Virus record (IMG/VR): IMGVR_UViG_3300028920_000022
Coordinates: 1 to 64,000 of that record
Length of the DNA: 64,000 bases
Reading direction: 5' to 3' (one strand)
The notes below the pieces were generated by a model, which was not told where the DNA came from, did no database searches, and saw nothing but the letters and a program-made list of their open reading frames with translations. Both the position numbers and the translations under genes were made by a program. This document shows positions 45,082-64,000 of the stretch, one piece after another. Position 1 is the stretch's first letter, and each line of letters begins with the position of its first letter.

Positions 45082-45084
45082 TGT

Positions 45085-46405: not shown

Positions 46406-46478
46406 ACCCTTTCTAATCCTTTTCCTAACAGCTTTTCTTTTCTTAACCCGCCCCTTGCCCTAAATATATAAAACGCCT

Positions 46479-46918: not shown

Positions 46919-47163
46919 TTAATTATCTCCCTTATAATTATCTCCTCACAACTCATATCCTTAACCTCGTACCATCTGATTTCGTTTAATTCGGAAATTC
47001 CCCAATTTTTGCTTTTCTTGCTTTTGTATATTATTATCCCACATTCCTTACACCTGTAATAATACTTGGTTAAATCATGTACACCAAATCCATGCGCTTT
47101 ACATATCTCCACTAACTCTTTGTTCCTTATTAATTTGCACTTTTCGTGTGTCCCTATCCTCAT
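46915..47163 (-). CDS. ZnF-IIE family protein
   Basis: MRIGTH..CKECG..SCEEIIIREIIK. Confidence 0.82.
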   Translation of the reverse strand: MRIGTHEKCKLIRNKELVEICKAHGFGVHDLTKYYYRCKECGIIIYKSKKSKNWGISELNEIRWYEVKDMSCEEIIIREIIK

Positions 47164-47405
47164 TTTATTATTCCCATCACTATCCAATCGTTACATGTTA
47201 TCCCCTCAGGTCTTCTATAAGTAAATTCGTGATTGCCATTTAAATCTGAAATGTAATATTGTAGCACTCCCTCTAATAAAATAATTCCACAAATAGTACA
47301 TTTATAATAACGCTCGCCTTCTGGTACTCCGCTAAATCCTAAACTTTTTGCCAATGCATCTACATCTTGTACTGGCTTTAATTCGTGCGTACCAAGTTTC
47401 TTCAT
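47160..47405 (-). CDS. ZnF-IIE family protein
   Basis: LGTH..CTICG..TCNDWIVMGIIK. Confidence 0.82.
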   Translation of the reverse strand: MKKLGTHELKPVQDVDALAKSLGFSGVPEGERYYKCTICGIILLEGVLQYYISDLNGNHEFTYRRPEGITCNDWIVMGIIK

Positions 47406-47638
47406 TTAATAATCTCCAGGATTATAAACTCATTGCAGCTTATATTCTTCGCAAAATTATACTTTGTTACCCCAGATATCATGAACTCGCCTTCCTTAGT
47501 CTCAAATGCTATCATCCCACATTCTGCGCATCGGTAATATTTGAATGTTCTGTCCATCCATATGTATCCGTTATCCTTTAAATAATCGAACTCTGCCCCG
47601 CTTATCCCCTCCAAATTGTGCGTTCCCACCGCTTTCAC
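47402..47638 (-). CDS. ZnF-IIE family protein
   Basis: VGTH..CAECG..SCNEFIILEIIK. Confidence 0.82.
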   Translation of the reverse strand: MKAVGTHNLEGISGAEFDYLKDNGYIWMDRTFKYYRCAECGMIAFETKEGEFMISGVTKYNFAKNISCNEFIILEIIK

Positions 47639-47859
47639 TCTATTATCTCCCGTATGATTATCTCTTCACAACTTATCTCTTCAGGTCTTTTAGGTAAATC
47701 TCTCCCGTTTAATTCGGAAATAACCATCCTCCCTAATCCGTCACTCTCGTCATATACCAATAATCCGCATTCGCTACACCTGTAATAATAATCCTCAAAT
47801 ACTACTCCGTTATAAAACTCCCTGTCCTCGTCAGTTAATTCCTTGAATCTGTGATTCAT
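47635..47859 (-). CDS. ZnF-IIE family protein
   Basis: NHRF..CSECG..SCEEIIIREIIE. Confidence 0.82.
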   Translation of the reverse strand: MNHRFKELTDEDREFYNGVVFEDYYYRCSECGLLVYDESDGLGRMVISELNGRDLPKRPEEISCEEIIIREIIE

Positions 47860-48122
47860 TCGATTATCTCTCTTATTACTAATTCGTTGTATTTTATTGC
47901 GTATTCATCACAAGTTATTACTTCAGAACTCTTGCCAATAAATACCACACTTAATCCGCTCATCCATGATATTAGAAATTCACCGTATTCTTCGTATACT
48001 ACTAATCCACATTCCTTACATTTATAATAATTTTCCAATATCTCCGGATTACAGAAACCTAAAGCTTGTGTTTGTAATTCCTTTACCTCATCCTCCTCCA
48101 TCTTTTCGAAATTGTGCCTCAT
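47856..48122 (-). CDS. ZnF-IIE family protein
   Basis: RHNF..CKECG..TC..LVIREIIE. Confidence 0.82.
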   Translation of the reverse strand: MRHNFEKMEEDEVKELQTQALGFCNPEILENYYKCKECGLVVYEEYGEFLISWMSGLSVVFIGKSSEVITCDEYAIKYNELVIREIIE

Positions 48123-48319
48123 TCGATTATTCCCCGTATTATCCATTCGTTACAACTTATTAAAGATGGATCTTTTCCAAGATATTCAAGGCTGTTATTA
48201 AAATGGGACATTAACATTTTATCGTCCTCTAAATATAATACCATCCCACATTCTTCGCATTTGTAATGGTATTGTGATAATTCAGCGATTTTCTTCATCC
48301 TGTGCGTCCCTATCTTCAT
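48119..48319 (-). CDS. ZnF-IIE family protein
   Basis: MKIGTH..CEECG..SCNEWIIRGIIE. Confidence 0.82.
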   Translation of the reverse strand: MKIGTHRMKKIAELSQYHYKCEECGMVLYLEDDKMLMSHFNNSLEYLGKDPSLISCNEWIIRGIIE

Positions 48320-48348
48320 CGGAAAAACCTACATCCCGTTTTATATAT

Positions 48349-48573
48349 TTACACTATTATCTCACCTATGATAAAATCATCGCAACTTATCTTCAAAGGA
48401 TTTTGTGGGTATGAACCGTTGATACGCGAAACTACAAACTCTTCGCTAAGATAGTATAAAATTATCCCACATGTGCTGCATTTGTAATATGTCCAATTTG
48501 TTTTGGGACATTGTGGGTGGTATGGATCTTTTATTTCTATTAATTCGTGCGTCCCTACCTCGATTACTTGCAT
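48349..48573 (-). CDS. ZnF-IIE family protein (first gene of array)
   Basis: VGTH..CSTCG..SCDDFIIGEIIV. Confidence 0.8.
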   Translation of the reverse strand: MQVIEVGTHELIEIKDPYHPQCPKTNWTYYKCSTCGIILYYLSEEFVVSRINGSYPQNPLKISCDDFIIGEIIV

Positions 48574-48889
48574 ATTCAACCCCGTTCTCGAATTTTAAAA
48601 GCTTGAAACGTAGTTTCTTTTTTATTTTTTCTTATCGTAATCCAATATTTTAAAACATTTTTGGGCATCTAAGTGCTCGAAATTAAAGGACTTTTTCACT
48701 TGGCTATGAGAGCTTATCACAGTTTGTAGGAAAAAACAAGGGGTTTTGTGAAGGGGGATTATTATAAGTTTGTAGAGAGATTGGTTTTAAATAATTGTAC
48801 AGGGTTTTTGCTTCGGTTATTCCCCAAGGTTTCAGGTTTCCCCAGTTTCTACGGCTTCTTCAGCTCTGGTTTCTACGGTTTACTCCAGT

Positions 48890-49046
48890 TTCTTTTTCGG
48901 TTGCCGCCGTTTCGGTTGCCATATTTCGATTGCCCCCGTTTCGGTTTCTTATTCGTTTTCGGTTTCTTATTCGGTTTCGGTTGCCATATTTCGGTTTTCT
49001 TATTCGGTTTCGGTTGCTTATTCGGTTGCTACATATTCGTTTGCCA
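48890..49046. repeat. iteron-like short tandem repeats (TTCGGTT core)
   Basis: about 10 exact TTCGGTT copies plus 3 variants, as TTTCGGTTGCC / TTCGGTTTCTTA units. Confidence 0.8.
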
Positions 49047-49511
49047 TAACACAGGTGGAGGGGGCGCCCGCCAGGGCGCGGCTGTCAACCCTTTATTGCG
49101 ATTCCAATATCCCCACAAACTATCCCACTTTCCACCCAAACTCTATTACCTTTCCATTCACTCTTTAATTCTTTTCCCCACTTTCTATTCTTACTGTTTT
49201 CTTTTTCTTCTCTCATCGAATATTCTTAAACCTTCGTTATTATTAGTTAAAACAAAACACTTTCAAAACTTAAATGTTTTCCAATACTTATAACTTGTTA
49301 CAGAAAAAAACGAATGATTCTCGACAATTATCTGGCAACACCAAACAACTATTGACAACCTTAAACCCCTCATGCTTTATTATCCGCTTTCTTATTCCTG
49401 CCATAGCTAACCCCGTGGAATCATTGAGGAATGTAAAAGAAGGAATAAGGAAGTTGACATAGTAGGAGGGATTGGGGTAAGGTTTGAGTCAATCGAACGG
49501 AGGCAAAGACA

Positions 49512-50735: not shown

Positions 50736-50814
50736 CATAACTTTTTGGCTGTGGTATTCTCGCGTTGCTTTCGACGCATACAGCGGCGAAGCAACGCGAG
50801 AAAGGTTGATTAGA

Positions 50815-51363: not shown

Positions 51364-51400
51364 CATTGACATTCGCCTTTTGGTGTGAGATAATCTGACC

Positions 51401-51574
51401 ATGAAGCACTATCAATCTGGTATCGAGTGGAGAACCGGTGCAGTCAACCAATTACAGCACCGCGGTAACAAGTGGTTTCTGATCACTTGTCAAAACGGGA
51501 ACACGAACGAAACTCCCGTGTCCAAGAAGATAGCGAAGTCTCTCCTGGCGGGAGGCATGAGCTACGGGTCATGA
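51401..51574 (+). CDS. 57-aa hypothetical protein (leaderless)
   Basis: ATG 6 nt after GATAAT; MKHYQSGIEW..GMSYGS. Confidence 0.6.
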   Translation: MKHYQSGIEWRTGAVNQLQHRGNKWFLITCQNGNTNETPVSKKIAKSLLAGGMSYGS

Positions 51575-51638
51575 CAGACTTTCGGCACGGGTTTTTGGTG
51601 GGGGCAACGTTAGCATTCCTACTGATGGGGATCATGTT

Positions 51639-51824
51639 GTGAAAGACTTCGGGTTAGTGGAGCTGGAGGAGAGGTTTCCGGCGGCATATGGGGCGTTGTC
51701 GGAACCGTACCGAAACGATTCCTGTTTGGTGTTTTTCGTTGACATAAACGGGAATCTATGTGCGGAGCTGGACATAGGGGGAGAATATCTCTGGACGGGG
51801 GAAAAGTGGGTTACAATCGGGTAA
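51639..51824 (+). CDS. hypothetical protein
   Basis: ORF. Confidence 0.55.
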   Translation: MKDFGLVELEERFPAAYGALSEPYRNDSCLVFFVDINGNLCAELDIGGEYLWTGEKWVTIG

Positions 51825-51844
51825 AAGCCTGATAGGGTAAAGCT

Positions 51845-52240
51845 ATGAAAAAGATTATTGACGGAATGGCTCGCGCCATGTACGTATGCTGGTGGGCGGA
51901 CCGGGAGGAAGAGAGGGGACGCAGCCACGGAGGGGAGGAGTTAACCGAGGTTGCTCCTGCAACGAACCGGCACGCCAAGGATCGAGCGTGGCTATTGTGC
52001 GGGATGTTCGAGCAACTGAACGGATTGAGCATCATGTCCCTTTTCGTGCGAGCCATGATTGCTGATGGCATCCTGCCGAGTTGGGAGTATACGGACGACC
52101 AGTTTCGGGAGGCATACGAGCGATATTCGGGGGAATTCGGGCATTACTTGGCAATGAGGGCAACCGGCACGGGGTGTGCGTGGGAGGACGATCACGCCAA
52201 GTTTGAGATTGAGTACCCGAATTACGAATATTACGCTTGA
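51845..52240 (+). CDS. hypothetical protein
   Basis: FGHYLAM...G.G..W.D motif; stop lies in TTGACA. Confidence 0.7.
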   Translation: MKKIIDGMARAMYVCWWADREEERGRSHGGEELTEVAPATNRHAKDRAWLLCGMFEQLNGLSIMSLFVRAMIADGILPSWEYTDDQFREAYERYSGEFGHYLAMRATGTGCAWEDDHAKFEIEYPNYEYYA

Positions 52241-52524
52241 CACGTGTTTCTAAACGTGCGAACATGGGTTTCATCAAAAGGAGAGAATAAGACTTATCAA
52301 GAAAAACCGCCAGGGTAGCTCCTCCGACGTTCAAGGTTTAGCTAACTTTTGGGCGACTTAAACTGGCAATCTCAGGAAAGCACCTGGGGAGCCTAGATAA
52401 AAGGACCAGAGAATAATGGTTTAGGGTTTTCTGGTGGCGGTTTTACTTGGTTAAAAAAGGGTTTTACAATGTCAGACTGGGAAAAAGGTTGACAGTCCCT
52501 CTTAATTGAGGTAAAAAGGGAACA

Positions 52525-52782
52525 ATGAACAAGCGGCAGTGGACACACTACTTCAAGGTACAGGGGCACGGACGTTTTCCCTACGATATGCTTCGGTATG
52601 ATCGGTGTTATCCGGCATACGAAGATGAATCATACAAGCTGGACACCACGGATATGCCCATAGCCAAGTATCTGGAGGATCGGGTGGTAGAATTGGTGCA
52701 TGTGGGCTCGCCGGACTGGCGCCCCATGAAAGCCCGTTGGACTTCGTTCGGCTGGCATGTGGTAGAAACCAGAAAAGCTTGA
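52525..52782 (+). CDS. conserved phage hypothetical protein
   Basis: F.V.G.G.FP.DMLRYD.C.P..RW.SFGW. Confidence 0.75.
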   Translation: MNKRQWTHYFKVQGHGRFPYDMLRYDRCYPAYEDESYKLDTTDMPIAKYLEDRVVELVHVGSPDWRPMKARWTSFGWHVVETRKA

Positions 52783-52813
52783 CAATCGGTTCTAAAAGAG
52801 GTAAAAGGGAACA

Positions 52814-53002
52814 ATGAAGCACACGGACAGAAAGAGTCGAGCGGACACAATCCCGGTTATCTGTGACAAGTGCGGAGCGGAAGCCAGAGGATTCCCGGGG
52901 ATGAGTCACCGAAGGTGTTCCGGGCAGGGAGACCAGGGACCGCGGGAAAAGCGAGCTGAGCGGCTGGCGCCCAAGAATCGAGGAGTCTGGCGAGCCGGCT
53001 GA
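52814..53002 (+). CDS. small zinc-binding protein
   Basis: CDKCG..H..C; own promoter. Confidence 0.65.
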   Translation: MKHTDRKSRADTIPVICDKCGAEARGFPGMSHRRCSGQGDQGPREKRAERLAPKNRGVWRAG

Positions 53003-53268
53003 GAGGACTAATCAACCAAAAACCGCCAAAGAGCAGAAAGAGGTTGTTTATAGGATAGAATAAGAGTAAACTCGGGGCGTGAGGGATCAAACGGGATCAA
53101 ACGGGTCTCTCACGCCTCGAATAGGGCACAGCAGAATAGTTTAGGCAGCGCGGCAACATAACCCTCACCGCCCCTGATTCCTTCTGTGCCGTATTCGGGG
53201 AGCCGCCCGAGCCCTATCGCGCCAGGGGTAATACTGGCGCTTAGATTAAACCCAGAGTAATTCTGAGG

Positions 53269-53538
53269 ATGACTACCGACAAGCAAAACGTTCTTTTTCG
53301 GAATATTCAGAAAAGACTGAATACGCTCGATGAAGCAAAACAGGATGATGACACAATCATTGTCTCGTTTTATTCGGATCAAAACCATCAAAAACTGGTT
53401 CTGACCCTATGGATTCGCAACCATACCGCCACGGTAGCCACTTCGGTTGCGGCGCCGGTTCACGGCTGGAAACAGCATGCAGCGGCTTGGCAACGGGCGG
53501 AAGAATTGGTATACTACCACAACCTAACGGATGGTTGA
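53269..53538 (+). CDS. hypothetical protein
   Basis: ORF. Confidence 0.55.
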   Translation: MTTDKQNVLFRNIQKRLNTLDEAKQDDDTIIVSFYSDQNHQKLVLTLWIRNHTATVATSVAAPVHGWKQHAAAWQRAEELVYYHNLTDG

Positions 53539-53588
53539 TTCCGGTAAAAAAGGCTTGACAATTTTTTCAATTGATGTAGGATACTGTC

Positions 53589-53813
53589 ATGAAACTTCAA
53601 GAAGTCGTGGACGCATTCACTCGCGGGGAAGTTGGTTCTGGAAACAACGTAATGTCGACTGGGGATAGGGTATATTCCTATCAGATGTTGATTGCGCAGC
53701 GGATTGATGGGAAGGTTCGCGTGGTGAATCCGAAGTGCAGTCCAAGCCGGACGACCAGCAAACACATCAATGCGGTTCTGCGGGCGTGTCCGGGTGCAGG
53801 GGTGGGCATCTGA
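53589..53813 (+). CDS. conserved phage hypothetical protein
   Basis: VYSY..LIA..S.TTSKH; own promoter. Confidence 0.7.
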   Translation: MKLQEVVDAFTRGEVGSGNNVMSTGDRVYSYQMLIAQRIDGKVRVVNPKCSPSRTTSKHINAVLRACPGAGVGI

Positions 53814-53883
53814 AGGTAAACAATGGCAATCAAGTACACAACCACAGTTGACGTTCAGTCAGCATCGATGAAAGGGTAGCAAC

Positions 53884-54120
53884 ATGGCAAAAACGAGAAA
53901 GAAGATGCCGCAAGATGCGGTCTTGTTCAAGTCTGAGAGCGTGTGCGCCGGCGGGACGATCATTGGCCCAGTATGGGTTCGGCGGAAAGGCAAGATTAGC
54001 AACTACAAGGACAGCGACCTACTGATCAGCGGGACCAAGAAGTTCTACCCGGAGTGGTTCACGCTGGGTGAGGCTCGTCGCCTCGCCAAGGTTTTGGATC
54101 TTGAATTCGAGGATGCCTGA
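53884..54120 (+). CDS. hypothetical protein
   Basis: ORF with SD. Confidence 0.6.
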   Translation: MAKTRKKMPQDAVLFKSESVCAGGTIIGPVWVRRKGKISNYKDSDLLISGTKKFYPEWFTLGEARRLAKVLDLEFEDA

Positions 54121-54184
54121 CTGGCAAGGACCGGCGAAAACGGATAATAAAGAGGTCGCTTTTACTTCGGTAGAAAAGAAGACA

Positions 54185-54367
54185 ATGAATAACACCCTAG
54201 CCCACTGTCCTACGGTTGCCCTTATCAACCGAATAAGGAACGCACCTATGGGTATGACCATGCGTGAGGTTGCGGATCAGTTGGTTGACGCTGGCGAGGA
54301 TCCTGGTACGGTTTTTCTGGCATATACTGCCGCAAAGATACTTGACAAGGACCAGGCTAAAAGGTAG
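54185..54367 (+). CDS. hypothetical protein
   Basis: start MNNTL. Confidence 0.55.
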   Translation: MNNTLAHCPTVALINRIRNAPMGMTMREVADQLVDAGEDPGTVFLAYTAAKILDKDQAKR

Positions 54368-54377
54368 AATAACACTC

Positions 54378-54584
54378 ATGAATGACGCAGAACGCGAAAA
54401 CTGGATTCTTAACGATGAAGGTCTCTATCACTGGTGGAAGTCCTCACGTCTGAGCATGCGCAGGTTTATCCGCGAAAACAGGGAAACCCTCACTTCCGCT
54501 ATCGAGGCTGCCGGTTCCGGCGGTGCTCCCGACCCACACCTGACCGAAGCTCAACGCGCTTCTGTTTGGTGTATGTCCATGTAG
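54378..54584 (+). CDS. hypothetical protein (leaderless)
   Basis: MNDAERENWILNDEGLY; TTGACA-17-TAGAAT. Confidence 0.7.
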   Translation: MNDAERENWILNDEGLYHWWKSSRLSMRRFIRENRETLTSAIEAAGSGGAPDPHLTEAQRASVWCMSM

Positions 54585-54591
54585 GTGTATA

Positions 54592-54960
54592 ATGTCTGAA
54601 TATAAAGCAACCTGTATTATTACGGGAAAAACGTTCACGGATCAAGAAGCCGAGGAACACATTGCGGAAACTTCTTTGGGTCCTGTGTGGGCGGCTCTTT
54701 GGGATTCGGATATTCAGTTCGATGAATATGGTATGGCTCTTATTCCTCGAAAGTGGAAGGAACGGTTTCGAATTCTTGAGAATGCTTCGGAAGATGCTTT
54801 TGAGAAGGAATGTCCACACGACCAGTTGATTGAATGTTATTCTCAAGAGTGGGTGTCTGGGGACTGTCTTCGATTGGATCTTCAGTGTAGCCAATGTGGG
54901 AAAAAGGGAACAATGTCAGTTCTATTGGACCCTAAAAACATTCTTTGGGAAAAAGATTGA
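54592..54960 (+). CDS. zinc-binding hypothetical protein
   Basis: CPH..CSQCG. Confidence 0.65.
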   Translation: MSEYKATCIITGKTFTDQEAEEHIAETSLGPVWAALWDSDIQFDEYGMALIPRKWKERFRILENASEDAFEKECPHDQLIECYSQEWVSGDCLRLDLQCSQCGKKGTMSVLLDPKNILWEKD

Positions 54961-54991
54961 CATTACCTAAAACCTGGAGTATAATCTTTTC

Positions 54992-55300
54992 ATGAATCTT
55001 TTCGTAGAAGAGTCGCACGTCGATGCCACCCGAGGGGTCAATTACGGCTCATCCGGCGTTCAGGAAAGTTTTACCAATAATGTTGGGCGTCTTTTCCGCT
55101 CCTGTCAGAGTCACTTCGGGCGCTGCACTTCCAGCGTCTATATCGACACCCCACAAGGGTCCAAAAAGATCGGTTGGGTTTTCGAGAAACAGGAAAAGTA
55201 CACTGACACTGGAGAGCCCTACCTGAGCGAAACGTGGGTAACAGTACACAAGTGCGCACCTGAACGTATGGTCAGATACGATTATCAGTTTTTGGATTGA
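54992..55300 (+). CDS. hypothetical protein (leaderless)
   Basis: GRCTSSVYID..IGWVFEK..ETWV. Confidence 0.75.
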   Translation: MNLFVEESHVDATRGVNYGSSGVQESFTNNVGRLFRSCQSHFGRCTSSVYIDTPQGSKKIGWVFEKQEKYTDTGEPYLSETWVTVHKCAPERMVRYDYQFLD

Positions 55301-55348
55301 CACATGGGGATCTGATAAGATATAAGGGAGCTACAAGGAAACGAAAAC

Positions 55349-55684
55349 ATGAACGAACCAGAAACCATTAGTGTAAATAATGTGGAATATGTGCGCAAAG
55401 ATGCTCAGCCGCCTCCGAACGGCAAGCGTGCTGTGGTCGTGGTTGACCGGGGTTGGATTTTTGCCGGCGATGTAGCTGAAGAAAACGGCAGAATTCGGCT
55501 CAGTCGTGCAGTGTTGGTGTTCAATTGGAGTCAGATTGGGTTTGATGGCGTGCTGAGGAATCCTAGAAGTGAGAAGGTGAACATCCGGAAGTTGTCACAC
55601 GACGTGGACTTGCCGTGTGATGCTGAGGTTTTTCGTATTCCAGTAGCTGATAACTGGGGACTGTTTTCGTATTCCAGTAGCTGA
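55349..55684 (+). CDS. Sm-like (DUF6948-like) protein
   Basis: VVVVDRGWIFAG..L..A....W; typically linked to GYG repeats. Confidence 0.6.
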   Translation: MNEPETISVNNVEYVRKDAQPPPNGKRAVVVVDRGWIFAGDVAEENGRIRLSRAVLVFNWSQIGFDGVLRNPRSEKVNIRKLSHDVDLPCDAEVFRIPVADNWGLFSYSSS

Positions 55685-55697
55685 TAACTGGGGACTG
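55630..55697. repeat. perfect 34-bp tandem duplication
   Basis: TTTTCGTATTCCAGTAGCTGATAACTGGGGACTG x2. Confidence 0.9.
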
Positions 55698-55699
55698 TG

Positions 55700-55933
55700 A
55701 TGGATGTTAATCCGATAGGTGACGGCTACGGCAGCGGCTACGGCGACGGCTACGGCAGCGGCTACGGCGACGGCTACGGCGACGGCTACGGCGACGGCTA
55801 CGGCGACGGCAGCGGCTACGGCTACGGCAACGGCAACGGCGACGGCAGCGGCTACGGCAACGGCTACGGCGACGGCGACGGCAGCGGCTACGGCTACGGT
55901 ACAATTAGACGCCGCATTAGAAGAAAACCTTGA
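55700..55933 (+). CDS. glycine-rich (GYGDG/GSG) repeat protein
   Basis: GGC-NAC tandem repeats; stop lies in TTGACA. Confidence 0.75.
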   Translation: MDVNPIGDGYGSGYGDGYGSGYGDGYGDGYGDGYGDGSGYGYGNGNGDGSGYGNGYGDGDGSGYGYGTIRRRIRRKP

Positions 55934-55964
55934 CAGCCATCTATCCTTTCTGATACACTGTATT

Positions 55965-56135
55965 CATCAAGCGGTCAGGAACCGAGGAGAATACTCTGGA
56001 ATACTGGACGAAGCAGGGACGCTTCGGGGGGATCCGTTTTATCTAGGCAACCCCAAACGGATCCCTCCGCACTCATGGTCCAACAGAGCCTCACGTTGAT
56101 CCTTCAGCCTTGGGCTTTCTCCGGCTGAACTCCCG
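55965..56135 (+). ncRNA. candidate structured non-coding RNA
   Basis: own promoter; nested stems GAGG/CCTC, CTCTG/CAGAG, TGGAC/GTCCA, CGAAGC/GCTTCG, GGATCCGTTT/AAACGGATCC. Confidence 0.55.
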
Positions 56136-56279
56136 ATTTCGTAAACGGTATCTGTTTCGTGGCTTTCCTTTCCTTGATTATGTTAAGGGTTATATCATGG
56201 GTCGGGATGGTTGTCAACCGGTTTTTTGATGGCAAGAAACTATTGACATTATCAAAAAAGTAAGATATAACCCTAGACC

Positions 56280-56531
56280 ATGAAAACAGCGATTATTGAG
56301 GTTGCTTACCTGTATGAGGACGGCACGTTTCTTACCCAGGTAATTGAGGTAAAAGCGGACCCGAAGGACAACGAAGCGGTCGAGCGAGCAAAGGACGAGT
56401 ATGCCCGTAAAAACCGAAATAAGGAGTGTGTCTGGTGTGTCACGCTTACCAACCACTTTGCGCTAGCAGAGATTCTGGAGGGGTTGAACCCTCGGGATCT
56501 GGTTGGACATAGCCGTCACGGAAACTATTGA
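56280..56531 (+). CDS. hypothetical protein
   Basis: own promoter. Confidence 0.65.
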   Translation: MKTAIIEVAYLYEDGTFLTQVIEVKADPKDNEAVERAKDEYARKNRNKECVWCVTLTNHFALAEILEGLNPRDLVGHSRHGNY

Positions 56532-56801
56532 CTTTGCCTGAAAACTAAGATATAACTCTGACTGCAAAAGCGGAGATAACATCACATGCAGATTTCGTTT
56601 GCTACTCTACACGTTTTGGCGTCGTTTTCGGTAGATGCAAAACGAACGCGGACTCGGTGGTTGGATCTAGTGGATTTGTATCCTGGGCAAGAAGTATCTT
56701 GTTTCTTTACCAATCACGAATTCAATCTTTTGGTATTCCCGGTTTTCGCGGATAAAAGGAAATAGTTGACATTATCCTAAAAACCCAATATAATCCTTCT
56801 C

Positions 56802-57950
56802 ATGTCTCAATACACAATCATGGCACACCGGCTCGACGAGCTGGAGAAACGAATCCGGCGCCTCAATAAAAAAGGTGGGAATATCGTCCTAGATGCCGGC
56901 TGTGAACGGGTCGAAGAATGGACCGACCCGGAAACCAATACCAAACATTCCCGCGTCGTGGTTGATATTGAGCTGGACGGGCTTGCCCCTGTCATTGATG
57001 GCTGGACCTTCATTGCCGCCCTGGAATGGCTGGAAACCGCCAATGTGGTCACTTCTGCCCCGGATACCCAGGTGCCCGAAAAGTACCGCCTGGCTGAGCC
57101 TATCTGCGAACATTGCGGCTGGGACCGTAAACGAATCTATACCTTCGTGCTTCGCTCGGAAACCGGGGAATATAAGCAGGTTGGCAAAACCTGCCTCCAA
57201 GACTTCCTCCGCTCCTCTGATCCCGGCTGGGCGGTCAACGTATTCAACCTCATGGGCGATCTGTCCCGGTGGGCTGAGTTGGACCGAGAAGAGTGTCTTG
57301 GGGGCGGTGGACCCCGGGGCTACAGTGCTCTGCGATTGCTGGCGGTTACTAGCAAGGTAATTCGGGAATATGGGTGGAAGGCGCGCAGCAAGGTTGTAGG
57401 CAACGAAGCAGCTACCGCTGACATTGCCTTGGCTTTTTTGGAAGATAACCCCTTTTCCGAGCTGGACCCTAAAGATCTCGAAAAGGCTACTGCGGTCCTC
57501 GATTGGGCGCCCACTATTGAACCCAAGTCGGATTATGAGCATAATCTCAAAACGGTATTAGGTGACGGACCTGACGGGCTAGTGAGGTACAAGCATGCTG
57601 GAATTGCGTGCAGCGGGATTATTGCGTACAATCGGGTACACGAGCAACCGAAGAGCAAGATTGAGTCAACCTATTTTGGTGAGATTGGAAAGCGATATCG
57701 TGGGGTTGCGGCTACGGTAAGCCGGGTGAGGTACACAGAGGGGATGTACGGGACCACGACTGTGGTATCGATGGTAACGCCGGAGGGGCAGGAATTGGTG
57801 TGGTTTGCTTCTGGAGGGGTCAAGGGGGTAGATGAGGATGAGCTGGTGGGAAAGGCGATCAAGCTGGACGGAACGGTAAAGAAGCATGATGAATTTCGGG
57901 GAGTAAAGCAAACGAAGCTGAACCGGTGTAAGATAGTGGTTGACGGGTGA
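56802..57950 (+). CDS. conserved phage protein with zinc finger and C-terminal OB-fold-like domain
   Basis: CEHCG..R..QVGKTC; G.IGKR..LVWFAS..GTVKKH.EF.G.KQT.L.R. Confidence 0.75.
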   Translation: MSQYTIMAHRLDELEKRIRRLNKKGGNIVLDAGCERVEEWTDPETNTKHSRVVVDIELDGLAPVIDGWTFIAALEWLETANVVTSAPDTQVPEKYRLAEPICEHCGWDRKRIYTFVLRSETGEYKQVGKTCLQDFLRSSDPGWAVNVFNLMGDLSRWAELDREECLGGGGPRGYSALRLLAVTSKVIREYGWKARSKVVGNEAATADIALAFLEDNPFSELDPKDLEKATAVLDWAPTIEPKSDYEHNLKTVLGDGPDGLVRYKHAGIACSGIIAYNRVHEQPKSKIESTYFGEIGKRYRGVAATVSRVRYTEGMYGTTTVVSMVTPEGQELVWFASGGVKGVDEDELVGKAIKLDGTVKKHDEFRGVKQTKLNRCKIVVDG

Positions 57951-58362
57951 GGTAAAGGTTGATATAAAGGATCTGTATCGCACGGGAGTAAAACATGGCA
58001 AAGCTAGTTGTATATTGCGGTAATGACGAAATTATTGTCACCACCAAGAAAAACGAAGCCCGAATGTTGGCGGAATATTTCCATGCCAAAACCGGTCGAA
58101 AGGTGGAGGACTACGATCGGAATGTCAAAATGACAATCCGTATTGCTAGTGAGGTAGTCGTCTCTGGTGATTAGAGGTGAGACGCTACTCCAAAGATCCT
58201 CATTGGTGGGTTGAGGTAAAGTTTAGTATAGGACGTTAGTGGGATGTGTATATTCAGTAAATGTAATTGGCAAGAGATTGCGCGCACATACGCGCCGCCG
58301 CTTAAAGTTGCGTTTGAGATTAAGGGTCCTTCTTACGCGGATGCGGCTGATAAGGTAATAGC

Positions 58363-58578
58363 ATGAATTGGGAATGCAGACTTTACGGAAAGATCAACAT
58401 TCAATCCGGAGCAATCCGCCGAGTAGACCGCAAGTTTGACGGGTCAGGGGACGTATATGCTGCTGCGTTGAGAGAGCTGAGCAAGCGGAAGGACCAAGGG
58501 GAACCGTGGTATGGGGATGCTGTCACGGTGATCACGCCACTAGGGCAGAAGCTCATTGTGGAAGTACCTTACCCTTGA
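58363..58578 (+). CDS. hypothetical protein
   Basis: SD; stop lies in TTGACA. Confidence 0.6.
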   Translation: MNWECRLYGKINIQSGAIRRVDRKFDGSGDVYAAALRELSKRKDQGEPWYGDAVTVITPLGQKLIVEVPYP

Positions 58579-58869
58579 CAGGTAGAATCAAGGGAAAAGA
58601 AACATATTGACATTGTTCCCTAAATACTGTAAGATCTTATCTTCAAATCGAAAACCAAGTTAAGTACCCGCTCGGAATGGTTCCGGGGCGGAACGAAGGT
58701 TAACACATATGAATCTAAAGCGATCGAGGTATCCTCCGCTTTCTTAACTTTTCGCTTGATAAAACTGTTGAATTTAATATGTTGATTGACTAAGTCCCCG
58801 TCCTGTTTGATAGAAGATTTCGCCGTCCTCTTGAAACACAGGGCGGGGCAACTTTTAGCGAAGGAAACC

Positions 58870-59121
58870 ATGACAGACAAGAAAAAGGGAATTTGGATTA
58901 TTGAGCGCCGGGATGGGGTTGAATATCTGGCGTGCGAGGTAGAATTCGCGCAAGGAATTGTTTATGTTCGCAAGCCGGTAAGAGCGAACGGCACTCACTG
59001 GGAAAAACTTTGTACTTCGGCGCTATACTTTCCCATTGACATGCTTGCGTCGTGGGGATGGACCGACGACAAAAATTATATTAAACAATATAATATTGCC
59101 GGCGCTTTTGCAGAAGAATAG
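58870..59121 (+). CDS. hypothetical protein
   Basis: AAGGA SD, MTDKKK. Confidence 0.6.
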   Translation: MTDKKKGIWIIERRDGVEYLACEVEFAQGIVYVRKPVRANGTHWEKLCTSALYFPIDMLASWGWTDDKNYIKQYNIAGAFAEE

Positions 59122-59176
59122 GGCAATCTGAGGCGCAATCATTCGCAGCTGCCGTCTGGGATGAGGAAAACAACCG

Positions 59177-59362
59177 ATGTCTCTAAAAACCGTCATAAAA
59201 GAAGAAAAGGATCTAATAAGCCTCACTATTGAAGGGATGAGCAAGGATCAGTTTCTGACGTTGTTTTATGCTCTTGAGAACCACGAAACTATGGATGGTC
59301 AAGACTTGTACGCCCGTATACGTTCAGCCATGCCGCAGGAATTGAGGGTTAAAATCTGGTAA
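59177..59362 (+). CDS. hypothetical protein
   Basis: GAGGA SD. Confidence 0.6.
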   Translation: MSLKTVIKEEKDLISLTIEGMSKDQFLTLFYALENHETMDGQDLYARIRSAMPQELRVKIW

Positions 59363-59403
59363 AAGAGATTGACAACCTGTTTTAAGTTTGGTATAAGGGT
59401 GAC

Positions 59404-59679
59404 ATGACAAAGCAAGAAATTATCACGGAGTTGGCGGGTGGACGTTGGAGTCACGAAGACATTCAGGATTTTGCCAGTGCTCTGAAGGGTTGTCGAGCAG
59501 CGGCTGATGCTGTTGCTAAGTGGCAATTTAATGTCGGGGATAAGGTCAAGTTTACGGGACGTCGGGGCAACGTAGTGGTTGGCACGGTAGTCAAGCGAAT
59601 GACCAAGAACCTGCAAGTTCGGGAGGATGAAAAGTTTCGTACCTGGACCGTTCCGCCGAGCATGTTGGAAAAGGTTTGA
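59404..59679 (+). CDS. KOW/SH3-like barrel protein
   Basis: FNVGDKVKF..G.V.K..K..WTVPPSML. Confidence 0.7.
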   Translation: MTKQEIITELAGGRWSHEDIQDFASALKGCRAAADAVAKWQFNVGDKVKFTGRRGNVVVGTVVKRMTKNLQVREDEKFRTWTVPPSMLEKV

Positions 59680-59710
59680 CAATTTGGGTAAAGTCTAGTA
59701 TAAAGATTTT

Positions 59711-60001
59711 ATGATTCACTTTAACGAACCTGGCGATCTCACGGAGTGGGCATTAGGGATATACCAGCAATTACGCTGGCAGCCCTGGGAGCCATTCGAT
59801 TCCGGCTCTAGGTTTCGTTGTATTGAGATTCCGATGCCCGCGACACAGAAAGCGTGGGAGGATCTGGAAACTAAGGTATTGACAGAATTACACTCTGACT
59901 GTTTTCTTGCACCTTCGGGGGAAAGCAGAGAAAAGGCGTTAATTGTCGAGATGGAGAATATTGTGGGATTTAGGACAATTCCATATCCGGGGCAACCTTG
60001 A
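59711..60001 (+). CDS. hypothetical protein (leaderless)
   Basis: own promoter. Confidence 0.65.
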   Translation: MIHFNEPGDLTEWALGIYQQLRWQPWEPFDSGSRFRCIEIPMPATQKAWEDLETKVLTELHSDCFLAPSGESREKALIVEMENIVGFRTIPYPGQP

Positions 60002-60032
60002 CAAGCGGATTTAATTAGAAAAAGGTTGACAA

Positions 60033-60383
60033 ATGCGAGTTTTAGGGCTAGACTTCACGGAACTTAAAACACATATTAACCAATCGGTTACGTCCGATCT
60101 AGCAAAAGGGGACCAAGTTTTCGAATATAAGGTTGGAGGGGCATCTTTGCTACTATTCCACCGGGCTGAAGATTGTCCTGAATATTCGGGGATGTGGTAC
60201 GTTTTATGGACTTTAGACTCCTGCGTGACGCAACTTCGAGGTTTTCCGGTGCCATTCGCTACACCGGAGGAGGCTCTTAATTTTCAAAAAGACTTAATTT
60301 TCGGGGAGCTTAAAACCAAGAAAAAGCAGATTATTGCTATTGAAAAACTATTAGCTCCTTTTGAGGATAAAGTTTTTAATTGA
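60033..60383 (+). CDS. hypothetical protein
   Basis: stop lies in TTGACA. Confidence 0.6.
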   Translation: MRVLGLDFTELKTHINQSVTSDLAKGDQVFEYKVGGASLLLFHRAEDCPEYSGMWYVLWTLDSCVTQLRGFPVPFATPEEALNFQKDLIFGELKTKKKQIIAIEKLLAPFEDKVFN

Positions 60384-60414
60384 CAGATTTTTTTAGTTAA
60401 GGTATAAGGGGACC

Positions 60415-60846
60415 ATGAATTACCGAGACGAAGCCGTTTACGACGCAAAGACGCTGGTCAAAGAGCAGCTAGCTGAACCCATTTTGGAACAGCTCGGACC
60501 GAATGGAAACCTAATGCGGGTTTTTGATCACGATTCGGTGTATACCTGGGTTCACGAATATTGTATTGATAAGTCGTACACGCTATTGGAAGCGGCAACG
60601 TTGCTTGACCAATTGCGAGATTATACCGAAACTGACTATGGACTTTGGCATTGTCTTGAGCCTAAAGATGCCATCGCCGTCCAGGCGGCATATACTTACG
60701 GGAATGCGGTGCAAAGTCTTGCCAGGAGTTTGGTGGAGAATATTGGGGAAGAATACGACACGCTAGAGCAGGGGGACGACGAGGCTGACGAAGCGTGGGA
60801 TGAGCGGGCACGAAAGCATATTGTCGAGTATATTGAGAACTTGTAG
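60415..60846 (+). CDS. acidic helical protein (possible Ocr-like DNA mimic)
   Basis: D/E-rich; leaderless early gene. Confidence 0.5.
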   Translation: MNYRDEAVYDAKTLVKEQLAEPILEQLGPNGNLMRVFDHDSVYTWVHEYCIDKSYTLLEAATLLDQLRDYTETDYGLWHCLEPKDAIAVQAAYTYGNAVQSLARSLVENIGEEYDTLEQGDDEADEAWDERARKHIVEYIENL

Positions 60847-60850
60847 GATC

Positions 60851-61219
60851 ATGACAGTAATTGATTTCAAAAAGGCACGAACCAGACAGCTAAAAGGCAA
60901 GAGTGTGGATGCCAATGGTATGTTCGTACCAGTACGAAAGGCTAAGGAAACCACAGAAGCAGATTGTTTCGTTTATCTAAACGGTGGCGACGGGGTGGTG
61001 CTATTACCGATAAGTGAAAGTTTGGATAATCTAAAACGATGTCTTGCAAAGTTTGATTTTAGCGACGACATGGAGATTGTGGAAATCGATGATATGCAAG
61101 GGTTTATGGAGATGGTACCTAAAGAGCTGGACGGAAAGCCAGTAAAGATAATTCTCAATCCTTTTCCAGTAGTGGGGGCAGAGAAGGTTGTATGTGGGAT
61201 GTTGTTAGATAAGGTTTGA
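60851..61219 (+). CDS. hypothetical protein
   Basis: start MTVIDF. Confidence 0.65.
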   Translation: MTVIDFKKARTRQLKGKSVDANGMFVPVRKAKETTEADCFVYLNGGDGVVLLPISESLDNLKRCLAKFDFSDDMEIVEIDDMQGFMEMVPKELDGKPVKIILNPFPVVGAEKVVCGMLLDKV

Positions 61220-61250
61220 CAACGGCTTATAATTGGGGTATAAAGAGACC

Positions 61251-61556
61251 ATGAATGACAAGGAATTTGAGGTTGGGTATGACGACTCCAATTGTTGGGG
61301 AGTTTTCGGTGTAGACTCAGGGCACTGTTATTCGCTTTATTCGGACAAGGGAGAAGCTGAGCTGGACGCGGTAAAGCGAGAGATTAACCGACTGGAGACT
61401 ATTGACAGCGGCTCGGATGAAATTCTCCGAACCATTCACAACGAATGGGTGGACACCTTGAGGGCTACGGAGGGGGACGCGGATGTTTCAGTATTGAAAC
61501 GACATATTCGGTTCGTTAAGAAGCTTTCGGAGGCAATTGAGATTCTCAAAGGATAG
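61251..61556 (+). CDS. hypothetical protein (leaderless)
   Basis: start MNDKEF 6 nt after TATAAA. Confidence 0.65.
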   Translation: MNDKEFEVGYDDSNCWGVFGVDSGHCYSLYSDKGEAELDAVKREINRLETIDSGSDEILRTIHNEWVDTLRATEGDADVSVLKRHIRFVKKLSEAIEILKG

Positions 61557-61558
61557 CT

Positions 61559-61888
61559 ATGCTTAAGTACATCAATGGACGTTGGCAGAGATTGCCTGAC
61601 AAAATGCCTGAGCCGAATATCGATTACATGAGTTTCGATCTTGACGAACTAATTGGGGCGGTTTATAATTGGTGTCATAATAGTGCCGAGGGGCTACGTT
61701 TTGACGCTGGGAATCTGATCCATCGCGTAGATCCTGGTGAAAAAGATTATTTACTTTCGGCAGCGAAAGATTGTGACACTGTAAAGGCAAAGATGGCAGA
61801 GGCTCTTGAAGTGATGTTTCCGGGGCTTCTACAGGAATTCTGGGAAGCACAAGAGGAAATCAAAATCAACCGATGCATGGCATTGTAA
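61559..61888 (+). CDS. hypothetical protein
   Basis: ORF in operon. Confidence 0.6.
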   Translation: MLKYINGRWQRLPDKMPEPNIDYMSFDLDELIGAVYNWCHNSAEGLRFDAGNLIHRVDPGEKDYLLSAAKDCDTVKAKMAEALEVMFPGLLQEFWEAQEEIKINRCMAL

Positions 61889-61902
61889 AGAGGAGAATAA
61901 AA

Positions 61903-62070
61903 ATGGACCTTGAGGAAGACACGAAGAATGAATGTTTGCGCCGATTGAGAGCATTATTGTCAGAATATAGGCATCAATCAAGGGAAAACGAACTCAACGG
62001 ATTGCAACATACTGCGGCGGTAAAAGCGGGCAGGCTGGAATCTATTATTGTTGCATTAGAGCAGCTTTAA
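61903..62070 (+). CDS. hypothetical protein
   Basis: GAGGAG SD, MDLEED. Confidence 0.6.
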   Translation: MDLEEDTKNECLRRLRALLSEYRHQSRENELNGLQHTAAVKAGRLESIIVALEQL

Positions 62071-62287
62071 GGCGATAACATAGAGAGACGCCTGGGAGAG
62101 ATTCCGTCGGGGAGATCATGTCTTCTCATTGAGGACACAAAAAGTGCGGCAGATTGCTTGACTTACCGTGGAGAGTTTGGTATTGCTAAGTTCAAGTTGT
62201 ATCAGGATCTAGCGATGCTGGAGGGTTTCCAGCACGCCAGGCGAACACCGGGGCTTAAAAACCTCCCCTTTCTTCATAAGTTAGTTG

Positions 62288-62572
62288 ATGAATGATCTAA
62301 AGCAGAAATTATGGTTACGGCGCCAAGCCATTCTTGCCGAATGTCCCAGGGAGGTTGCTCGGGAACAGAATACGGAGGAAATGGTTGCGTTGGACCGTGA
62401 AGCAATTTCACACTGCGTGGATGATCGTATTGCTCGCGGGTGGGCGCCGGAGGATGTTTTGGCTTATGCTATCAATCTGGAGCATGTAAACCCTGTACTT
62501 GAGGAAGACGTGGCACTCAAGAGAATGGCAGAAGTTTCTAAAAAGTATCCTCCGATTAAGAAGAGGGGTTGA
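62288..62572 (+). CDS. hypothetical protein
   Basis: stop lies in TTGACT. Confidence 0.6.
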   Translation: MNDLKQKLWLRRQAILAECPREVAREQNTEEMVALDREAISHCVDDRIARGWAPEDVLAYAINLEHVNPVLEEDVALKRMAEVSKKYPPIKKRG

Positions 62573-62607
62573 CTTTCATATTAAGGCTTGATATAAGGAA
62601 ATTAGAT

Positions 62608-63075
62608 ATGTACTACAAACCAATCAACCGTAAATCTAGCGCCATTAGTGCATTGCTGGACGAATCCCCGGTATATCAAAAGCAAGGGGAGGTCAATGCT
62701 CGTCCTGCGAATACTGGAGAGGCAATCACTACTGAACTAAAGAGTGGTACTACGGAAACTACCAATACTGCAAAGCCCGGAGATTGGATCGTCACTAATC
62801 CGAGTGGAGAGCAGTACATTATTTCCGGGGAAAAGTTTTTCAATCGTTACCAACCGACCAGTAAAACTGGAGTTTACGCTGCCAAGGGGTTCTGCCGAGC
62901 AGTTCAGAATCCTTTTGGGGAACCGATTCAGATCATGGCATCTTGGGGTGAGGTGCAGGTAGGTGACGAACACTGTTTTATTGCGGACGTTTGCAACGCA
63001 GCCGGGGTAAGAGACGGAGAGCCGTACCTTATTGATGCTGATGCTTTTAGAGATACGTATCAAAAAGCGCATTGA
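62608..63075 (+). CDS. PGDYG-domain-like protein
   Basis: AKPGDWIV.NP.GEQY.I..EKF...Y; duplicated half domain. Confidence 0.7.
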   Translation: MYYKPINRKSSAISALLDESPVYQKQGEVNARPANTGEAITTELKSGTTETTNTAKPGDWIVTNPSGEQYIISGEKFFNRYQPTSKTGVYAAKGFCRAVQNPFGEPIQIMASWGEVQVGDEHCFIADVCNAAGVRDGEPYLIDADAFRDTYQKAH

Positions 63076-63106
63076 CAATTAGACTTTAATCGGCTATAAT
63101 TGCTTT

Positions 63107-63541
63107 ATGGAAATCGCAGAAAGTGATAAACCGCTATTCGATGCTTTACCTAAGCTAGTACAGCGAACACAGGAGCTATTGAAGGCAGCCGGGCTTACCT
63201 GTAAGATTAGTGTCAATGATGATGCCTGGTCGGATCCTTCGATTGAACTGGATACTACTGGTATTGGTGTTTGTATTTCGTGGGATTCCGATAAGGTTAC
63301 ATATGGCGCTTTTACTACGGTTTACAATCCGGGAGTGATGTACTACCCAGATGGTAGTGGGGAACCGCCGAGCGAGGATTACAGCGAACTGGGGAAAGCC
63401 AGCACGAATCCTAACGGTCCTCTCACTGAGGCAATCAAGGCATTGATTGAGTTTCGGCTTAATGATCTGTTTGAGCACGAAGCGGACGAAGAGGAAGCCA
63501 AGTATTGGGCGGAAATGGAAAGAGTGGATTTTAATCCTTGA
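63107..63541 (+). CDS. acidic hypothetical protein (leaderless)
   Basis: consensus promoter; YYPDGSGEPP motif. Confidence 0.7.
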   Translation: MEIAESDKPLFDALPKLVQRTQELLKAAGLTCKISVNDDAWSDPSIELDTTGIGVCISWDSDKVTYGAFTTVYNPGVMYYPDGSGEPPSEDYSELGKASTNPNGPLTEAIKALIEFRLNDLFEHEADEEEAKYWAEMERVDFNP

Positions 63542-63574
63542 CAATAGTCCTTATTCCGATCTATAAGGTTGGTC

Positions 63575-63814
63575 ATGACAATTATTCTAGCAAATGGTCC
63601 CAAGGTTCCGGCACACGGCACAACGGCAGCGTGGCGGAGTGTATTGGTTCAAGAGCCTACTGAGCTGGTGGTTTATGCCGAGTATTTCAATGATACTGGA
63701 TCATACTACAGTCACGGGGTGTACTTCGACAGTGCACAATGGAAGGAAGCAAAGCGGCACTTTACGCAAGCGGTATGTCGGGACCTGAGACGAATTGATG
63801 AGATTAGGGGTTGA
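63575..63814 (+). CDS. hypothetical protein
   Basis: Y.HG.YF motif; own promoter. Confidence 0.6.
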   Translation: MTIILANGPKVPAHGTTAAWRSVLVQEPTELVVYAEYFNDTGSYYSHGVYFDSAQWKEAKRHFTQAVCRDLRRIDEIRG

Positions 63815-63898
63815 CAAAAGGTTTAGATAGGGGTAGTATTCTCAACATCAAGTGACGGAAGTCACAGAAAGACACAACAAACAGGAGATTATCGAATT

Positions 63899-64000
63899 AT
63901 GGCACAGGTGAAGATTTTCAATCAGAGTTTCGTGAAGTTGGCTCGTTCGCGAGCTGAGCAGCTGATCGACGGTGGTGAGCGTGGCAGTGTGACTCGTCCG
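63899..64000 (+). CDS. hypothetical protein (partial)
   Basis: AGGAG SD, MAQVKIFNQSF, open to window edge. Confidence 0.55.
   Translation, partial: MAQVKIFNQSFVKLARSRAEQLIDGGERGSVTRP

What the first reader, a model, noticed from the sequence alone, without database searches (positions are those of the whole stretch)
55960..56180. Promoter-driven multibranch ncRNA candidate
Seen: after TTGACA-18-TACACT there is no credible ORF. Three nested helices (55984-56009 with 56078-56092) enclose two hairpins, followed by TTCAGCC/GGCTGAA. Inference: an early phage sRNA (antitoxin mimic, decoy or ribozyme).
Basis: partly seen in the sequence, partly recalled or inferred. Interest (0 to 1): 0.6.

Follow-up and report, generated by a model that had tools for sequence, protein, structure and literature searches.

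The report
Orphan promoter-led structured noncoding spacer
In the early-gene array of an uncultivated 459-kb marine-sediment phage, one promoter of the local type is followed by 280 bases with no gene but a non-random Y-shaped fold, which makes it a plausible yet unproven phage RNA.

Summary
TTGACA-18-(TG)-TACACT at 55930-55959 scores as a member of this genome's own promoter family. At least 21 such promoters drive leaderless genes at 51-79 kb. No credible ORF follows until the next cassette at 56280. Its 14-15-bp hairpin is far beyond chance.

- There is no Rfam match, no second copy in the genome and no RNA reads.
- No intrinsic terminator follows, although canonical ones exist elsewhere in the genome.
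- The only relative with DNA in hand (L011, about 97-98% identical) gives no covariation.
- L011's differences include two 1-nt indels, so no reading frame is conserved, and they spare the stems.
- More distant relatives of the flanking genes lack the gap.
- Nothing points to a ribozyme or an antitoxin mimic.

A rival reading is a decayed leaderless gene cassette. ATC stands where the neighbours have ATG, that frame has a single stop, and there is a weak codon-usage trace. No protein relative exists.

Verdict: a plausible non-coding early transcript or leader, a new and unvalidated member of a known kind, of modest interest.

The parts
55930..55959 (+). Sigma-70-type promoter: -35 TTGACA (55930-35), 18-nt spacer with TG at 55951-52 (extended -10), -10 TACACT (55954-59). 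The -35 overlaps the stop codon of the upstream Gly-Tyr repeat gene.
   Evidence: Weight-matrix score 21.3 bits, within the range of 17 cassette promoters. Identical in L011.
55966..55983 (+). Predicted transcript start (A55966, 7 nt after the -10, where neighbouring cassettes have the A of ATG) and an unpaired 5' tail. It reads AUC, not AUG.
   Evidence: Inferred from the geometry of at least 21 leaderless cassettes. Unpaired in the folds. Not measured.
55984..56092 (+). Y-shaped (three-way junction) domain: three short nested helices closing two adjacent hairpins.
   Evidence: Minimum-energy fold equals centroid, -43.2 kcal/mol, z -3.1. The core is kept in L011. Single copy in the genome.
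56010..56025 (+). Small hairpin GAAGC-AGGGAC-GCUUC (5 bp, 6-nt loop).
   Evidence: Invariant in L011.
56026..56068 (+). Long hairpin, 14 bp (15 with C56025-G56069), 15-nt loop. Its one non-Watson-Crick pair is G-U on the + strand, which would be C-A on the - strand. It contains two GGATCC sites and the single in-frame TAG (56044-46).
   Evidence: Non-random: 2 such hairpins in 14 kb against 0.03 expected. No U-tract follows.
56103..56129 (+). Third hairpin TTCAGCC / GGCTGAA (7 bp, 13-nt loop), with no U-tract after it.
   Evidence: Invariant in L011.
56130..56242 (+). Weakly structured, U-rich 3' part up to the next promoter. It holds a T6 run (56222-27) without a preceding terminator stem. 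Several of the differences from L011 fall here (T56142C, G56199A, -1 T in the T-run, G56236T).
56243..56282 (+). Next cassette: TTGACA-17-TATAAC, then 8 nt, then ATG 56280 of the 83-aa gene. This is the boundary of the gap, not part of the element.
   Evidence: The gene is under purifying selection (dN/dS about 0.1).

Best explanation
The 347-nt gap is a non-coding transcription unit. Host sigma-70 RNA polymerase starts at about A55966 from a promoter of the same family that drives the neighbouring leaderless early genes. The transcript lacks a 5' AUG and any Shine-Dalgarno plus start combination, so it is not translated. It folds into a roughly 110-nt Y-shaped domain whose stable 14-15-bp hairpin is the selected feature.

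No intrinsic terminator follows. A discrete RNA, if there is one, would therefore have to be cut out by processing, for example RNase III or RNase E acting at or near the long hairpin. Otherwise the domain is the structured 5' end of a read-through early transcript.

I take the structured domain to be the functional part, acting as RNA (a protein-binding or decoy RNA, or a stability or processing element) rather than as a base-pairing sRNA of the classical terminator-ended kind.

Shown: promoter-family membership, absence of coding capacity, the non-random hairpin, and retention in one close relative. Inferred: that it is transcribed, the start site, processing, and any function.
For: - Promoter: 10 of 12 matches plus TG. 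The weight matrix from 17 local cassettes gives 21.3 bits, about rank 17 of 30,000 positions.
- Context: at least 21 cassettes of the form TTGACA-17-TATAAx-N6-8-ATG lie on the + strand at 51-79 kb.
- Non-coding: the codon log-likelihood of all three frames is below every 88-codon window of 26 genes. No Pfam, PHROGs, word-search or HMMER relatives were found. No paralogue exists in the genome. A +1 insertion and a -1 deletion separate the window from L011. The ORFs in the gap differ between the two.
- Structure: z = -3.1 and minimum-energy fold equals centroid. The long hairpin is strongly non-random. Its only imperfection is G-U on the + strand.
- Relative: the first 116 nt of the transcript are identical in L011. 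Of 6 changes in the domain, 5 are in unpaired positions and 1 is at a helix end.
- Rate: the gap has 8 substitutions in 347 nt (0.023 per site), against dS of 0.10-0.14 in the flanking genes.
- Precedent: promoter-proximal ncRNA candidates conserved only among close relatives are common in virulent phages (PMC10914365).
Against: - No RNA evidence: no RNA run holds the sequence, and the reads laid down are DNA contigs that do not cover 55963-56264.
- No covariation: one relative, with no change on both sides of any pair.
- No terminator, although canonical ones exist in this genome.
- z is only -1.7 over the full span, and the minus strand of the core folds almost as well.
- The substitution-free tract 55602-56081 also covers the upstream gene, so it may reflect recent recombination rather than selection on the RNA.
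- The element is absent next to more distant homologues of both flanking genes.
- No Rfam family matches.
Confidence: 0.45

Rival explanations
1. Decayed leaderless gene cassette: the promoter once drove an 88-codon leaderless gene that has lost its start (ATG to ATC) and acquired a TAG. The remaining sequence is a drifting relic whose folds are incidental, or were later co-opted.
For: - ATC at 55966 stands exactly where the cassettes have ATG, 6 nt after the -10.
- That frame runs to TGA 56227-29 with a single stop, TAG 56044-46. The chance of one stop or fewer is 0.09 in shuffles.
- Its codon score (-0.04) is the best of the three frames and above the shuffle mean of -0.18 (p = 0.08). The first 26 codons score 0.13, within the gene range (p = 0.03).
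- Frame-breaking indels in L011 fit the absence of coding constraint.
- The gap is absent in distant relatives.
Against: - No protein relative of any frame was found: Pfam, PHROGs, the word search, and HMMER on 1.84 billion representatives for the 3' 60 codons. No paralogue exists in the genome.
- The whole-frame score lies below every gene window.
- An A at +1 is expected for any promoter, so only the T is coincidental.
- A 14-15-bp hairpin is about 60-fold over chance expectation and is not explained by decay.
- The sequence diverges more slowly than flanking synonymous sites.
Confidence: 0.25
2. Cis-acting leader or insulator: the structure acts only on its own transcript or on read-through from upstream. 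It could be a processing site that separates upstream messages from the downstream leaderless cassettes, or a processive antitermination element of the HK022 put type (two adjacent stem-loops just after an early promoter).
For: - Two directly adjacent stem-loops begin 45 nt after the predicted start.
- No terminator lies in the gap, so transcripts must continue into the 83-aa gene.
- Other long hairpins with 18-19-nt loops sit in other intergenic gaps of the same array, at 50757-50802 and 53072-53120.
- That put RNA and the T7 RNase III sites work this way is from established knowledge, not tested here.
Against: - The downstream genes have their own promoters and are leaderless, so a leader adds nothing obvious to their translation.
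- No downstream terminators that would need antitermination were found.
- There is no sequence or model match to any known cis element.
Confidence: 0.15
3. DNA-level element: the 15-bp inverted repeat, and the GAATACT direct repeat at 55989-95 and 55999-56005, are protein-binding or recombination sites, and the promoter-like site is incidental.
For: - The inverted repeat is near-perfect at the DNA level.
- The GAATACT direct repeats are spaced 10 bp apart.
- The region is a mosaic junction: homology with L011 starts only at about 55343, and the gene order differs in L012.
Against: - The arms of the three long palindromes in the array share no motif.
- The motif CAAACGG(G)ATC is not enriched in the genome.
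- The single imperfection is G-T on the + strand, which favours RNA.
- The promoter scores as well as working cassette promoters.
Confidence: 0.1

Closest known systems
Promoter-proximal / 5'UTR-derived ncRNA candidates of virulent phages (ONT-cappable-seq of Pseudomonas phages, PMC10914365)
   Same: A short structured RNA directly after a phage promoter, with no ORF and no Shine-Dalgarno sequence. Sequence is conserved only among close relatives and the function is unknown.
   Different: Those candidates have mapped 5' and 3' ends, northern blots, and end by premature termination. Here there are no RNA data and no terminator. The unit stands alone between two genes that each have their own promoter.
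Leaderless promoter-gene cassettes of the same array (window 51-64 kb and on to 79 kb)
   Same: Same -35 hexamer, A-rich upstream tract and promoter-to-+1 geometry. The site occupies one cassette slot in the array.
   Different: No ATG at +1 (ATC), an in-frame TAG, no coding statistics, an 18-nt rather than 17-nt spacer, and TACACT with TG rather than TATAAx.
HK022 put RNA and T7 early RNase III sites (established knowledge, not tested)
   Same: Stable stem-loops in early transcripts shortly after host-type promoters, acting as RNA structure rather than through sequence.
   Different: No model or sequence match. put has two defined stem-loops that bind RNA polymerase, and terminators lie downstream. 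T7 R sites are longer stems with internal loops. None of this could be tested here.
CsrB/RsmZ-type protein-titrating sRNAs
   Same: The first 104 nt carry 7 GGA triplets against 2.4 expected (p = 0.0014 by shuffles, motif chosen post hoc). One lies in the loop of the small hairpin.
   Different: No Rfam hit to any Csr/Rsm family. Most of the GGA triplets lie in predicted stems. There is no terminator and the host is unknown.

Membership tests
Any Rfam 15 family (ribozymes, riboswitches, known phage and bacterial sRNAs, tRNA-like RNAs) | Covariance-model score at or above the family's gathering threshold | tested here: not met
   At the gathering threshold the window yields only 8 tRNAs. At E up to 10 on 55850-56350, the best hits score 12-17 bits against thresholds of 36-95, and none lies on the structured core.
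Local sigma-70-type early promoter family of this phage | TTGACA, 17±1 nt, TAnAAx-type -10, A-rich upstream tract, +1 A 6-8 nt after the -10 | tested here: met
   Weight matrix from 17 cassettes scores the site 21.3 bits (training range 17.5-36.8), about rank 17 of 30,000. The -10 is off-consensus (TACACT) but carries the extended TG.
Leaderless protein-coding cassette | ATG at +1, an open frame, and the codon usage of the array | tested here: not met
   ATC at +1 and TAG at 56044-46. Log-likelihood is -0.04 per codon against at least 0.078 in all 123 gene windows. L011 has frame-shifting indels.
Classical trans-acting sRNA gene (own promoter, no ORF, intrinsic terminator) | A GC-rich stem with a short loop followed by a U-tract, defining the 3' end | tested here: not met
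   No terminator-like site lies between 55960 and 56280. The genome does use canonical terminators elsewhere, for example at 215892, 317762 and 358130.
Classical trans-acting sRNA gene | Expressed as a discrete RNA | not testable with these tools
   No RNA run holds the sequence. The runs laid down are DNA contigs.
Structured RNA with conserved fold | Compensatory base changes in relatives | tested here: inconclusive
   Only one relative with DNA (L011). There are 0 double changes. Of 6 differences in the domain, 5 are unpaired and 1 is at a helix end.
ToxI-type RNA antitoxin or its phage mimic | Tandem repeats of about 34-36 nt in the RNA, next to (or mimicking those next to) a toxN-type gene | tested here: not met
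   No tandem repeat lies in 55960-56280. The 34-bp duplication at 55630-55698 lies in the junction of two protein genes and is absent in L011. None of the eight neighbouring proteins matches a toxin family in Pfam or PHROGs.

The most novel reading that the evidence does not exclude
The Y-shaped domain is the founding member of an undescribed class of early megaphage RNAs. It would be made by host polymerase in the first minutes of infection and act as a protein decoy, for example titrating a GGA-binding global regulator of the CsrA/RsmA type, or an RNA-binding defence or RNase component of the host.
Probability: 0.12. Interest if true: 0.6.

Novelty: new member of a known kind. Interest (0 to 1): 0.3.

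Why it matters
If the RNA is real, it would be one of very few non-coding early transcripts known from phages above 400 kb. It sits in an unusually regular array of leaderless promoter-gene cassettes, where one slot has been given over to an RNA instead of a protein. As it stands it is an orphan: one genome lineage, no expression data and no covariation. It mainly flags a locus to check when metatranscriptomes or a host become available. The surrounding architecture (the leaderless cassette array and the roughly 46-copy small-protein array) is arguably more remarkable than the candidate itself.

Tried and rejected
- Rfam at gathering and at permissive thresholds: nothing.
- blastn of the locus against 50,697 phage records: no match.
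- Own genome: no second copy by DNA, by translated search or by covariance model R1. R1 on 19 related loci hits only L011.
- Relatives through flanking proteins in IMG/VR: the 382-aa protein gives hits only at 26-36% identity, and the 83-aa and 111-aa proteins give none.
- Word search of the 111-aa protein: a large family (1,319 hits), but only P0001 (L011) carries the gap. Contigs for P0002, P0004, P0006, P0013 and P0042 either end too early or continue straight into other genes.
- The 83-aa protein has one other cluster (P0122, 74% identity), which sits in a different gene order without a gap.
- Two further contigs carry the identical 83-aa protein (ENA ERZ27252253, Logan SRR8554435), but no DNA could be fetched for them.
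- Hairpin pattern scan of viral and metagenome contigs: only the window's own contig, plus unrelated palindromes.
- Sequencing runs: no RNA holder. The four other DNA runs carry low-depth pieces of this or a near-identical phage beside the gap but not over 55963-56264. The many reads on 55722-55900 are unrelated GGC/GAC low-complexity matches.
- Protein readings of every stop-free frame segment: Pfam, PHROGs, word search and HMMER on 1.84 billion representatives all empty.
- Stop-codon recoding as a way to read through the TAG: rejected. The genome is not recoded (standard-code frames of 150 aa or more, both strands, sum to an amount equal to about 75% of its length), and the start codon is missing anyway. 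No other genetic code was used.
- A shared motif between the long hairpins (CAAACGG(G)ATC) is not enriched.
- The 12-14-nt complementarities to other phage sites are at chance level.

Full report
**Context.** The window is the first 64 kb of a 458,729-bp IMG/VR virus record, estimated complete. It was assembled from a marine-sediment metagenome. GC content is about 38% over most of the genome but 45-50% at 50-80 kb. GC skew changes sign at about 49-50 kb, where transcription diverges. From about 51 to 79 kb the + strand carries an array of small genes. At least 21 of them have the arrangement TTGACA-17(±1)-TATAAx, then 6-8 nt, then ATG, and many intergenic spacers are exactly 31 nt. By geometry these are leaderless mRNAs made from sigma-70-type promoters. 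That makes the region 'early' by inference, not by measurement.

**The observation.** The finding lies in the largest-but-one gap of this array. The gap is 346 nt, running from the stop of a Gly-Tyr/Gly-Asp repeat gene (55700-55933) to the leaderless ATG at 56280.
- The promoter TTGACA-18-TACACT is present at 55930-55959. It has TG one base before the -10, and its -35 overlaps the upstream stop codon.
- A weight matrix from 17 cassette promoters scores it 21.3 bits. This is inside the training range (17.5-36.8) and about rank 17 of 30,000 positions.
The following hairpin 56103-56129 is also present.
The multibranch fold is therefore plausible, not proven.
- The long hairpin alone is clearly non-random. 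Inverted repeats matching at 13 of 14 or better, with loops of 3-30 nt, occur twice in 50-64 kb against 0.03 expected, and 18 times in the genome. Its single non-Watson-Crick pair is G-U on the + strand.

**Is it coding?** No frame has a usable start.
- One detail deserves mention. At the position where the cassettes have ATG, this unit has ATC (55966). That frame is open to TGA 56227-29 except for one TAG at 56044-46.
- Its codon-usage log-likelihood (-0.04 per codon) is above shuffles (-0.18 ± 0.11, p = 0.08). It is below every 88-codon window of 26 neighbouring genes (minimum 0.078). The first 26 codons alone score 0.13.
- No frame segment matches Pfam or PHROGs. The 3' 60 codons have no relative by word search or by HMMER against 1.84 billion representatives. 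The genome holds no paralogue.
- The genome carries a tRNA with anticodon UUA but is not recoded. I did not read the TAG through with another code.

**Relatives.** Only one relative with DNA in hand carries the gap. This is L011, a 1,534-bp ENA contig found through the upstream 111-aa protein. It is about 97-98% identical over [111-aa gene, repeat gene, gap, 83-aa gene], and homology ends just upstream of the 111-aa gene.
- The flanking genes show dS of 0.14 and 0.10, with dN/dS about 0.1-0.15.
- The gap shows 8 substitutions and two 1-nt indels: A56082C, A56083G, A56093G, C56094T, +G after 56094, T56096G, T56142C, G56199A, -T in the run 56222-27, and G56236T.
- The indels mean that no frame is conserved across the 3' two-thirds, and the small ORFs differ between the two sequences.
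- The promoter and the first 116 nt of the transcript are identical. Within the domain, 5 of 6 changes are unpaired and 1 removes a terminal pair. The core fold persists in L011.
- This is compatible with a constrained RNA but is not covariation. The substitution-free tract (55602-56081) also spans the repeat gene, so recent recombination is an equally good explanation for it.
- More distant homologues of the 111-aa plus repeat-protein pair are followed directly by other genes. The 74%-identical homologue of the 83-aa gene sits in a different gene order with no gap. The element is therefore young or lineage-specific.
- Covariance model R1 finds no second copy in the genome or in 19 related loci. 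Pattern scans of viral and metagenome contigs find only the source contig.

**Expression and 3' end.** No RNA run holds the sequence. Four other DNA runs contain low-depth pieces of this or a near-identical phage but none across 55963-56264. No terminator-like site lies in the gap, while canonical terminators with short loops and U-tracts do occur elsewhere in the genome. A discrete RNA would therefore need processing. Otherwise the structure is the 5' part of a read-through transcript.

**Interpretation.** I rank the readings as follows.
1. A non-coding early transcript whose Y-shaped domain is the functional part, 0.45.
2. A decayed leaderless cassette, 0.25. This does not exclude later use as RNA.
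3. A purely cis-acting processing or antitermination leader, 0.15.
4. A DNA-level site, 0.1.

A post hoc observation is that the first 104 nt hold 7 GGA triplets against 2.4 expected. This suggests a protein-titrating RNA as the most interesting surviving possibility, but most of the triplets lie in stems and no Csr/Rsm model matches.

**Comparison and novelty.** Promoter-proximal ncRNA candidates that are conserved only among close relatives have been mapped in many virulent phages (PMC10914365). phiKZ early transcripts, by contrast, showed no leaderless mRNAs (PMC8244752). The candidate is best filed as a new, unvalidated member of that known kind. It fails the defining tests for any Rfam family, for a terminator-ended sRNA, for a ToxI-like antitoxin and for a coding cassette.

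Noticed in passing
window 36282-48579, minus strand: Tandem array of about 46 contiguous small ORFs (70-98 aa, 4-nt start/stop overlaps). 45 of 46 hit another member by blastp at E<=1e-3, so they form one paralogous family, with a CxxCG motif and a C-terminal '...IIE' motif. The region has a strongly negative GC skew.
   Followed up: partly
window 51366-64000 and genome to about 79 kb, + strand: At least 21 leaderless cassettes of the form TTGACA-17-TATAAx-N6-8-ATG, many with intergenic spacers of exactly 31 nt. This is an unusually regular array of one-promoter-per-gene early genes in a block with 45-50% GC inside a genome of about 38% GC.
   Followed up: partly
window 55349-55933; loci L014, L017-L022: The 111-aa protein and the following Gly-Tyr/Gly-Asp repeat protein with an Arg-rich tail form a translationally coupled pair (the stop overlaps the ATG). 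The pair is conserved on many metagenomic phage contigs, and the 111-aa family has more than 1,300 members without a Pfam domain.
   Followed up: partly
window 55630-55698 and 55722-55899: A perfect 34-bp tandem duplication lies at the junction of the two genes. It changes the C-terminus of the 111-aa protein and is absent in L011. The repeat gene is 108 nt longer than in L011, an in-frame copy-number change.
   Followed up: yes
genome 451588-451662, minus strand (outside the window): A tRNA with anticodon UUA (ochre-suppressor type) is among the 16 phage tRNAs. ORF statistics show no genome-wide stop-codon reassignment.
   Followed up: partly
window 50757-50802 and 53072-53120: Two further long hairpins (14-15-bp arms, 18-19-nt loops) lie in other ORF-free gaps of the same array. 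The first overlaps the -10 of a TTGACA-17-(TG)-TATTCT promoter whose -35 also overlaps the upstream stop codon. The gaps 52241-52524 and 58579-58785 are also ORF-poor.
   Followed up: no
window 48895-49039: Tandem repeats with periods of 15-51 nt lie inside ORF 48748-49293, next to the point where strand bias and GC skew switch.
   Followed up: no
loci L025-L069 (for example L026:2549-2585, L062:1670-1706 and 2356-2392): Unrelated to the phage. A family of long palindromes, GGTTCCGGGATCCGTTTTC-variable loop-GAAAACGGATCCCGGAACC, occurs on dozens of contigs of a few JGI metagenomes (Ga0105107, Ga0209706 and others). It looks like a dispersed REP-like element of some high-GC organism.
   Followed up: no
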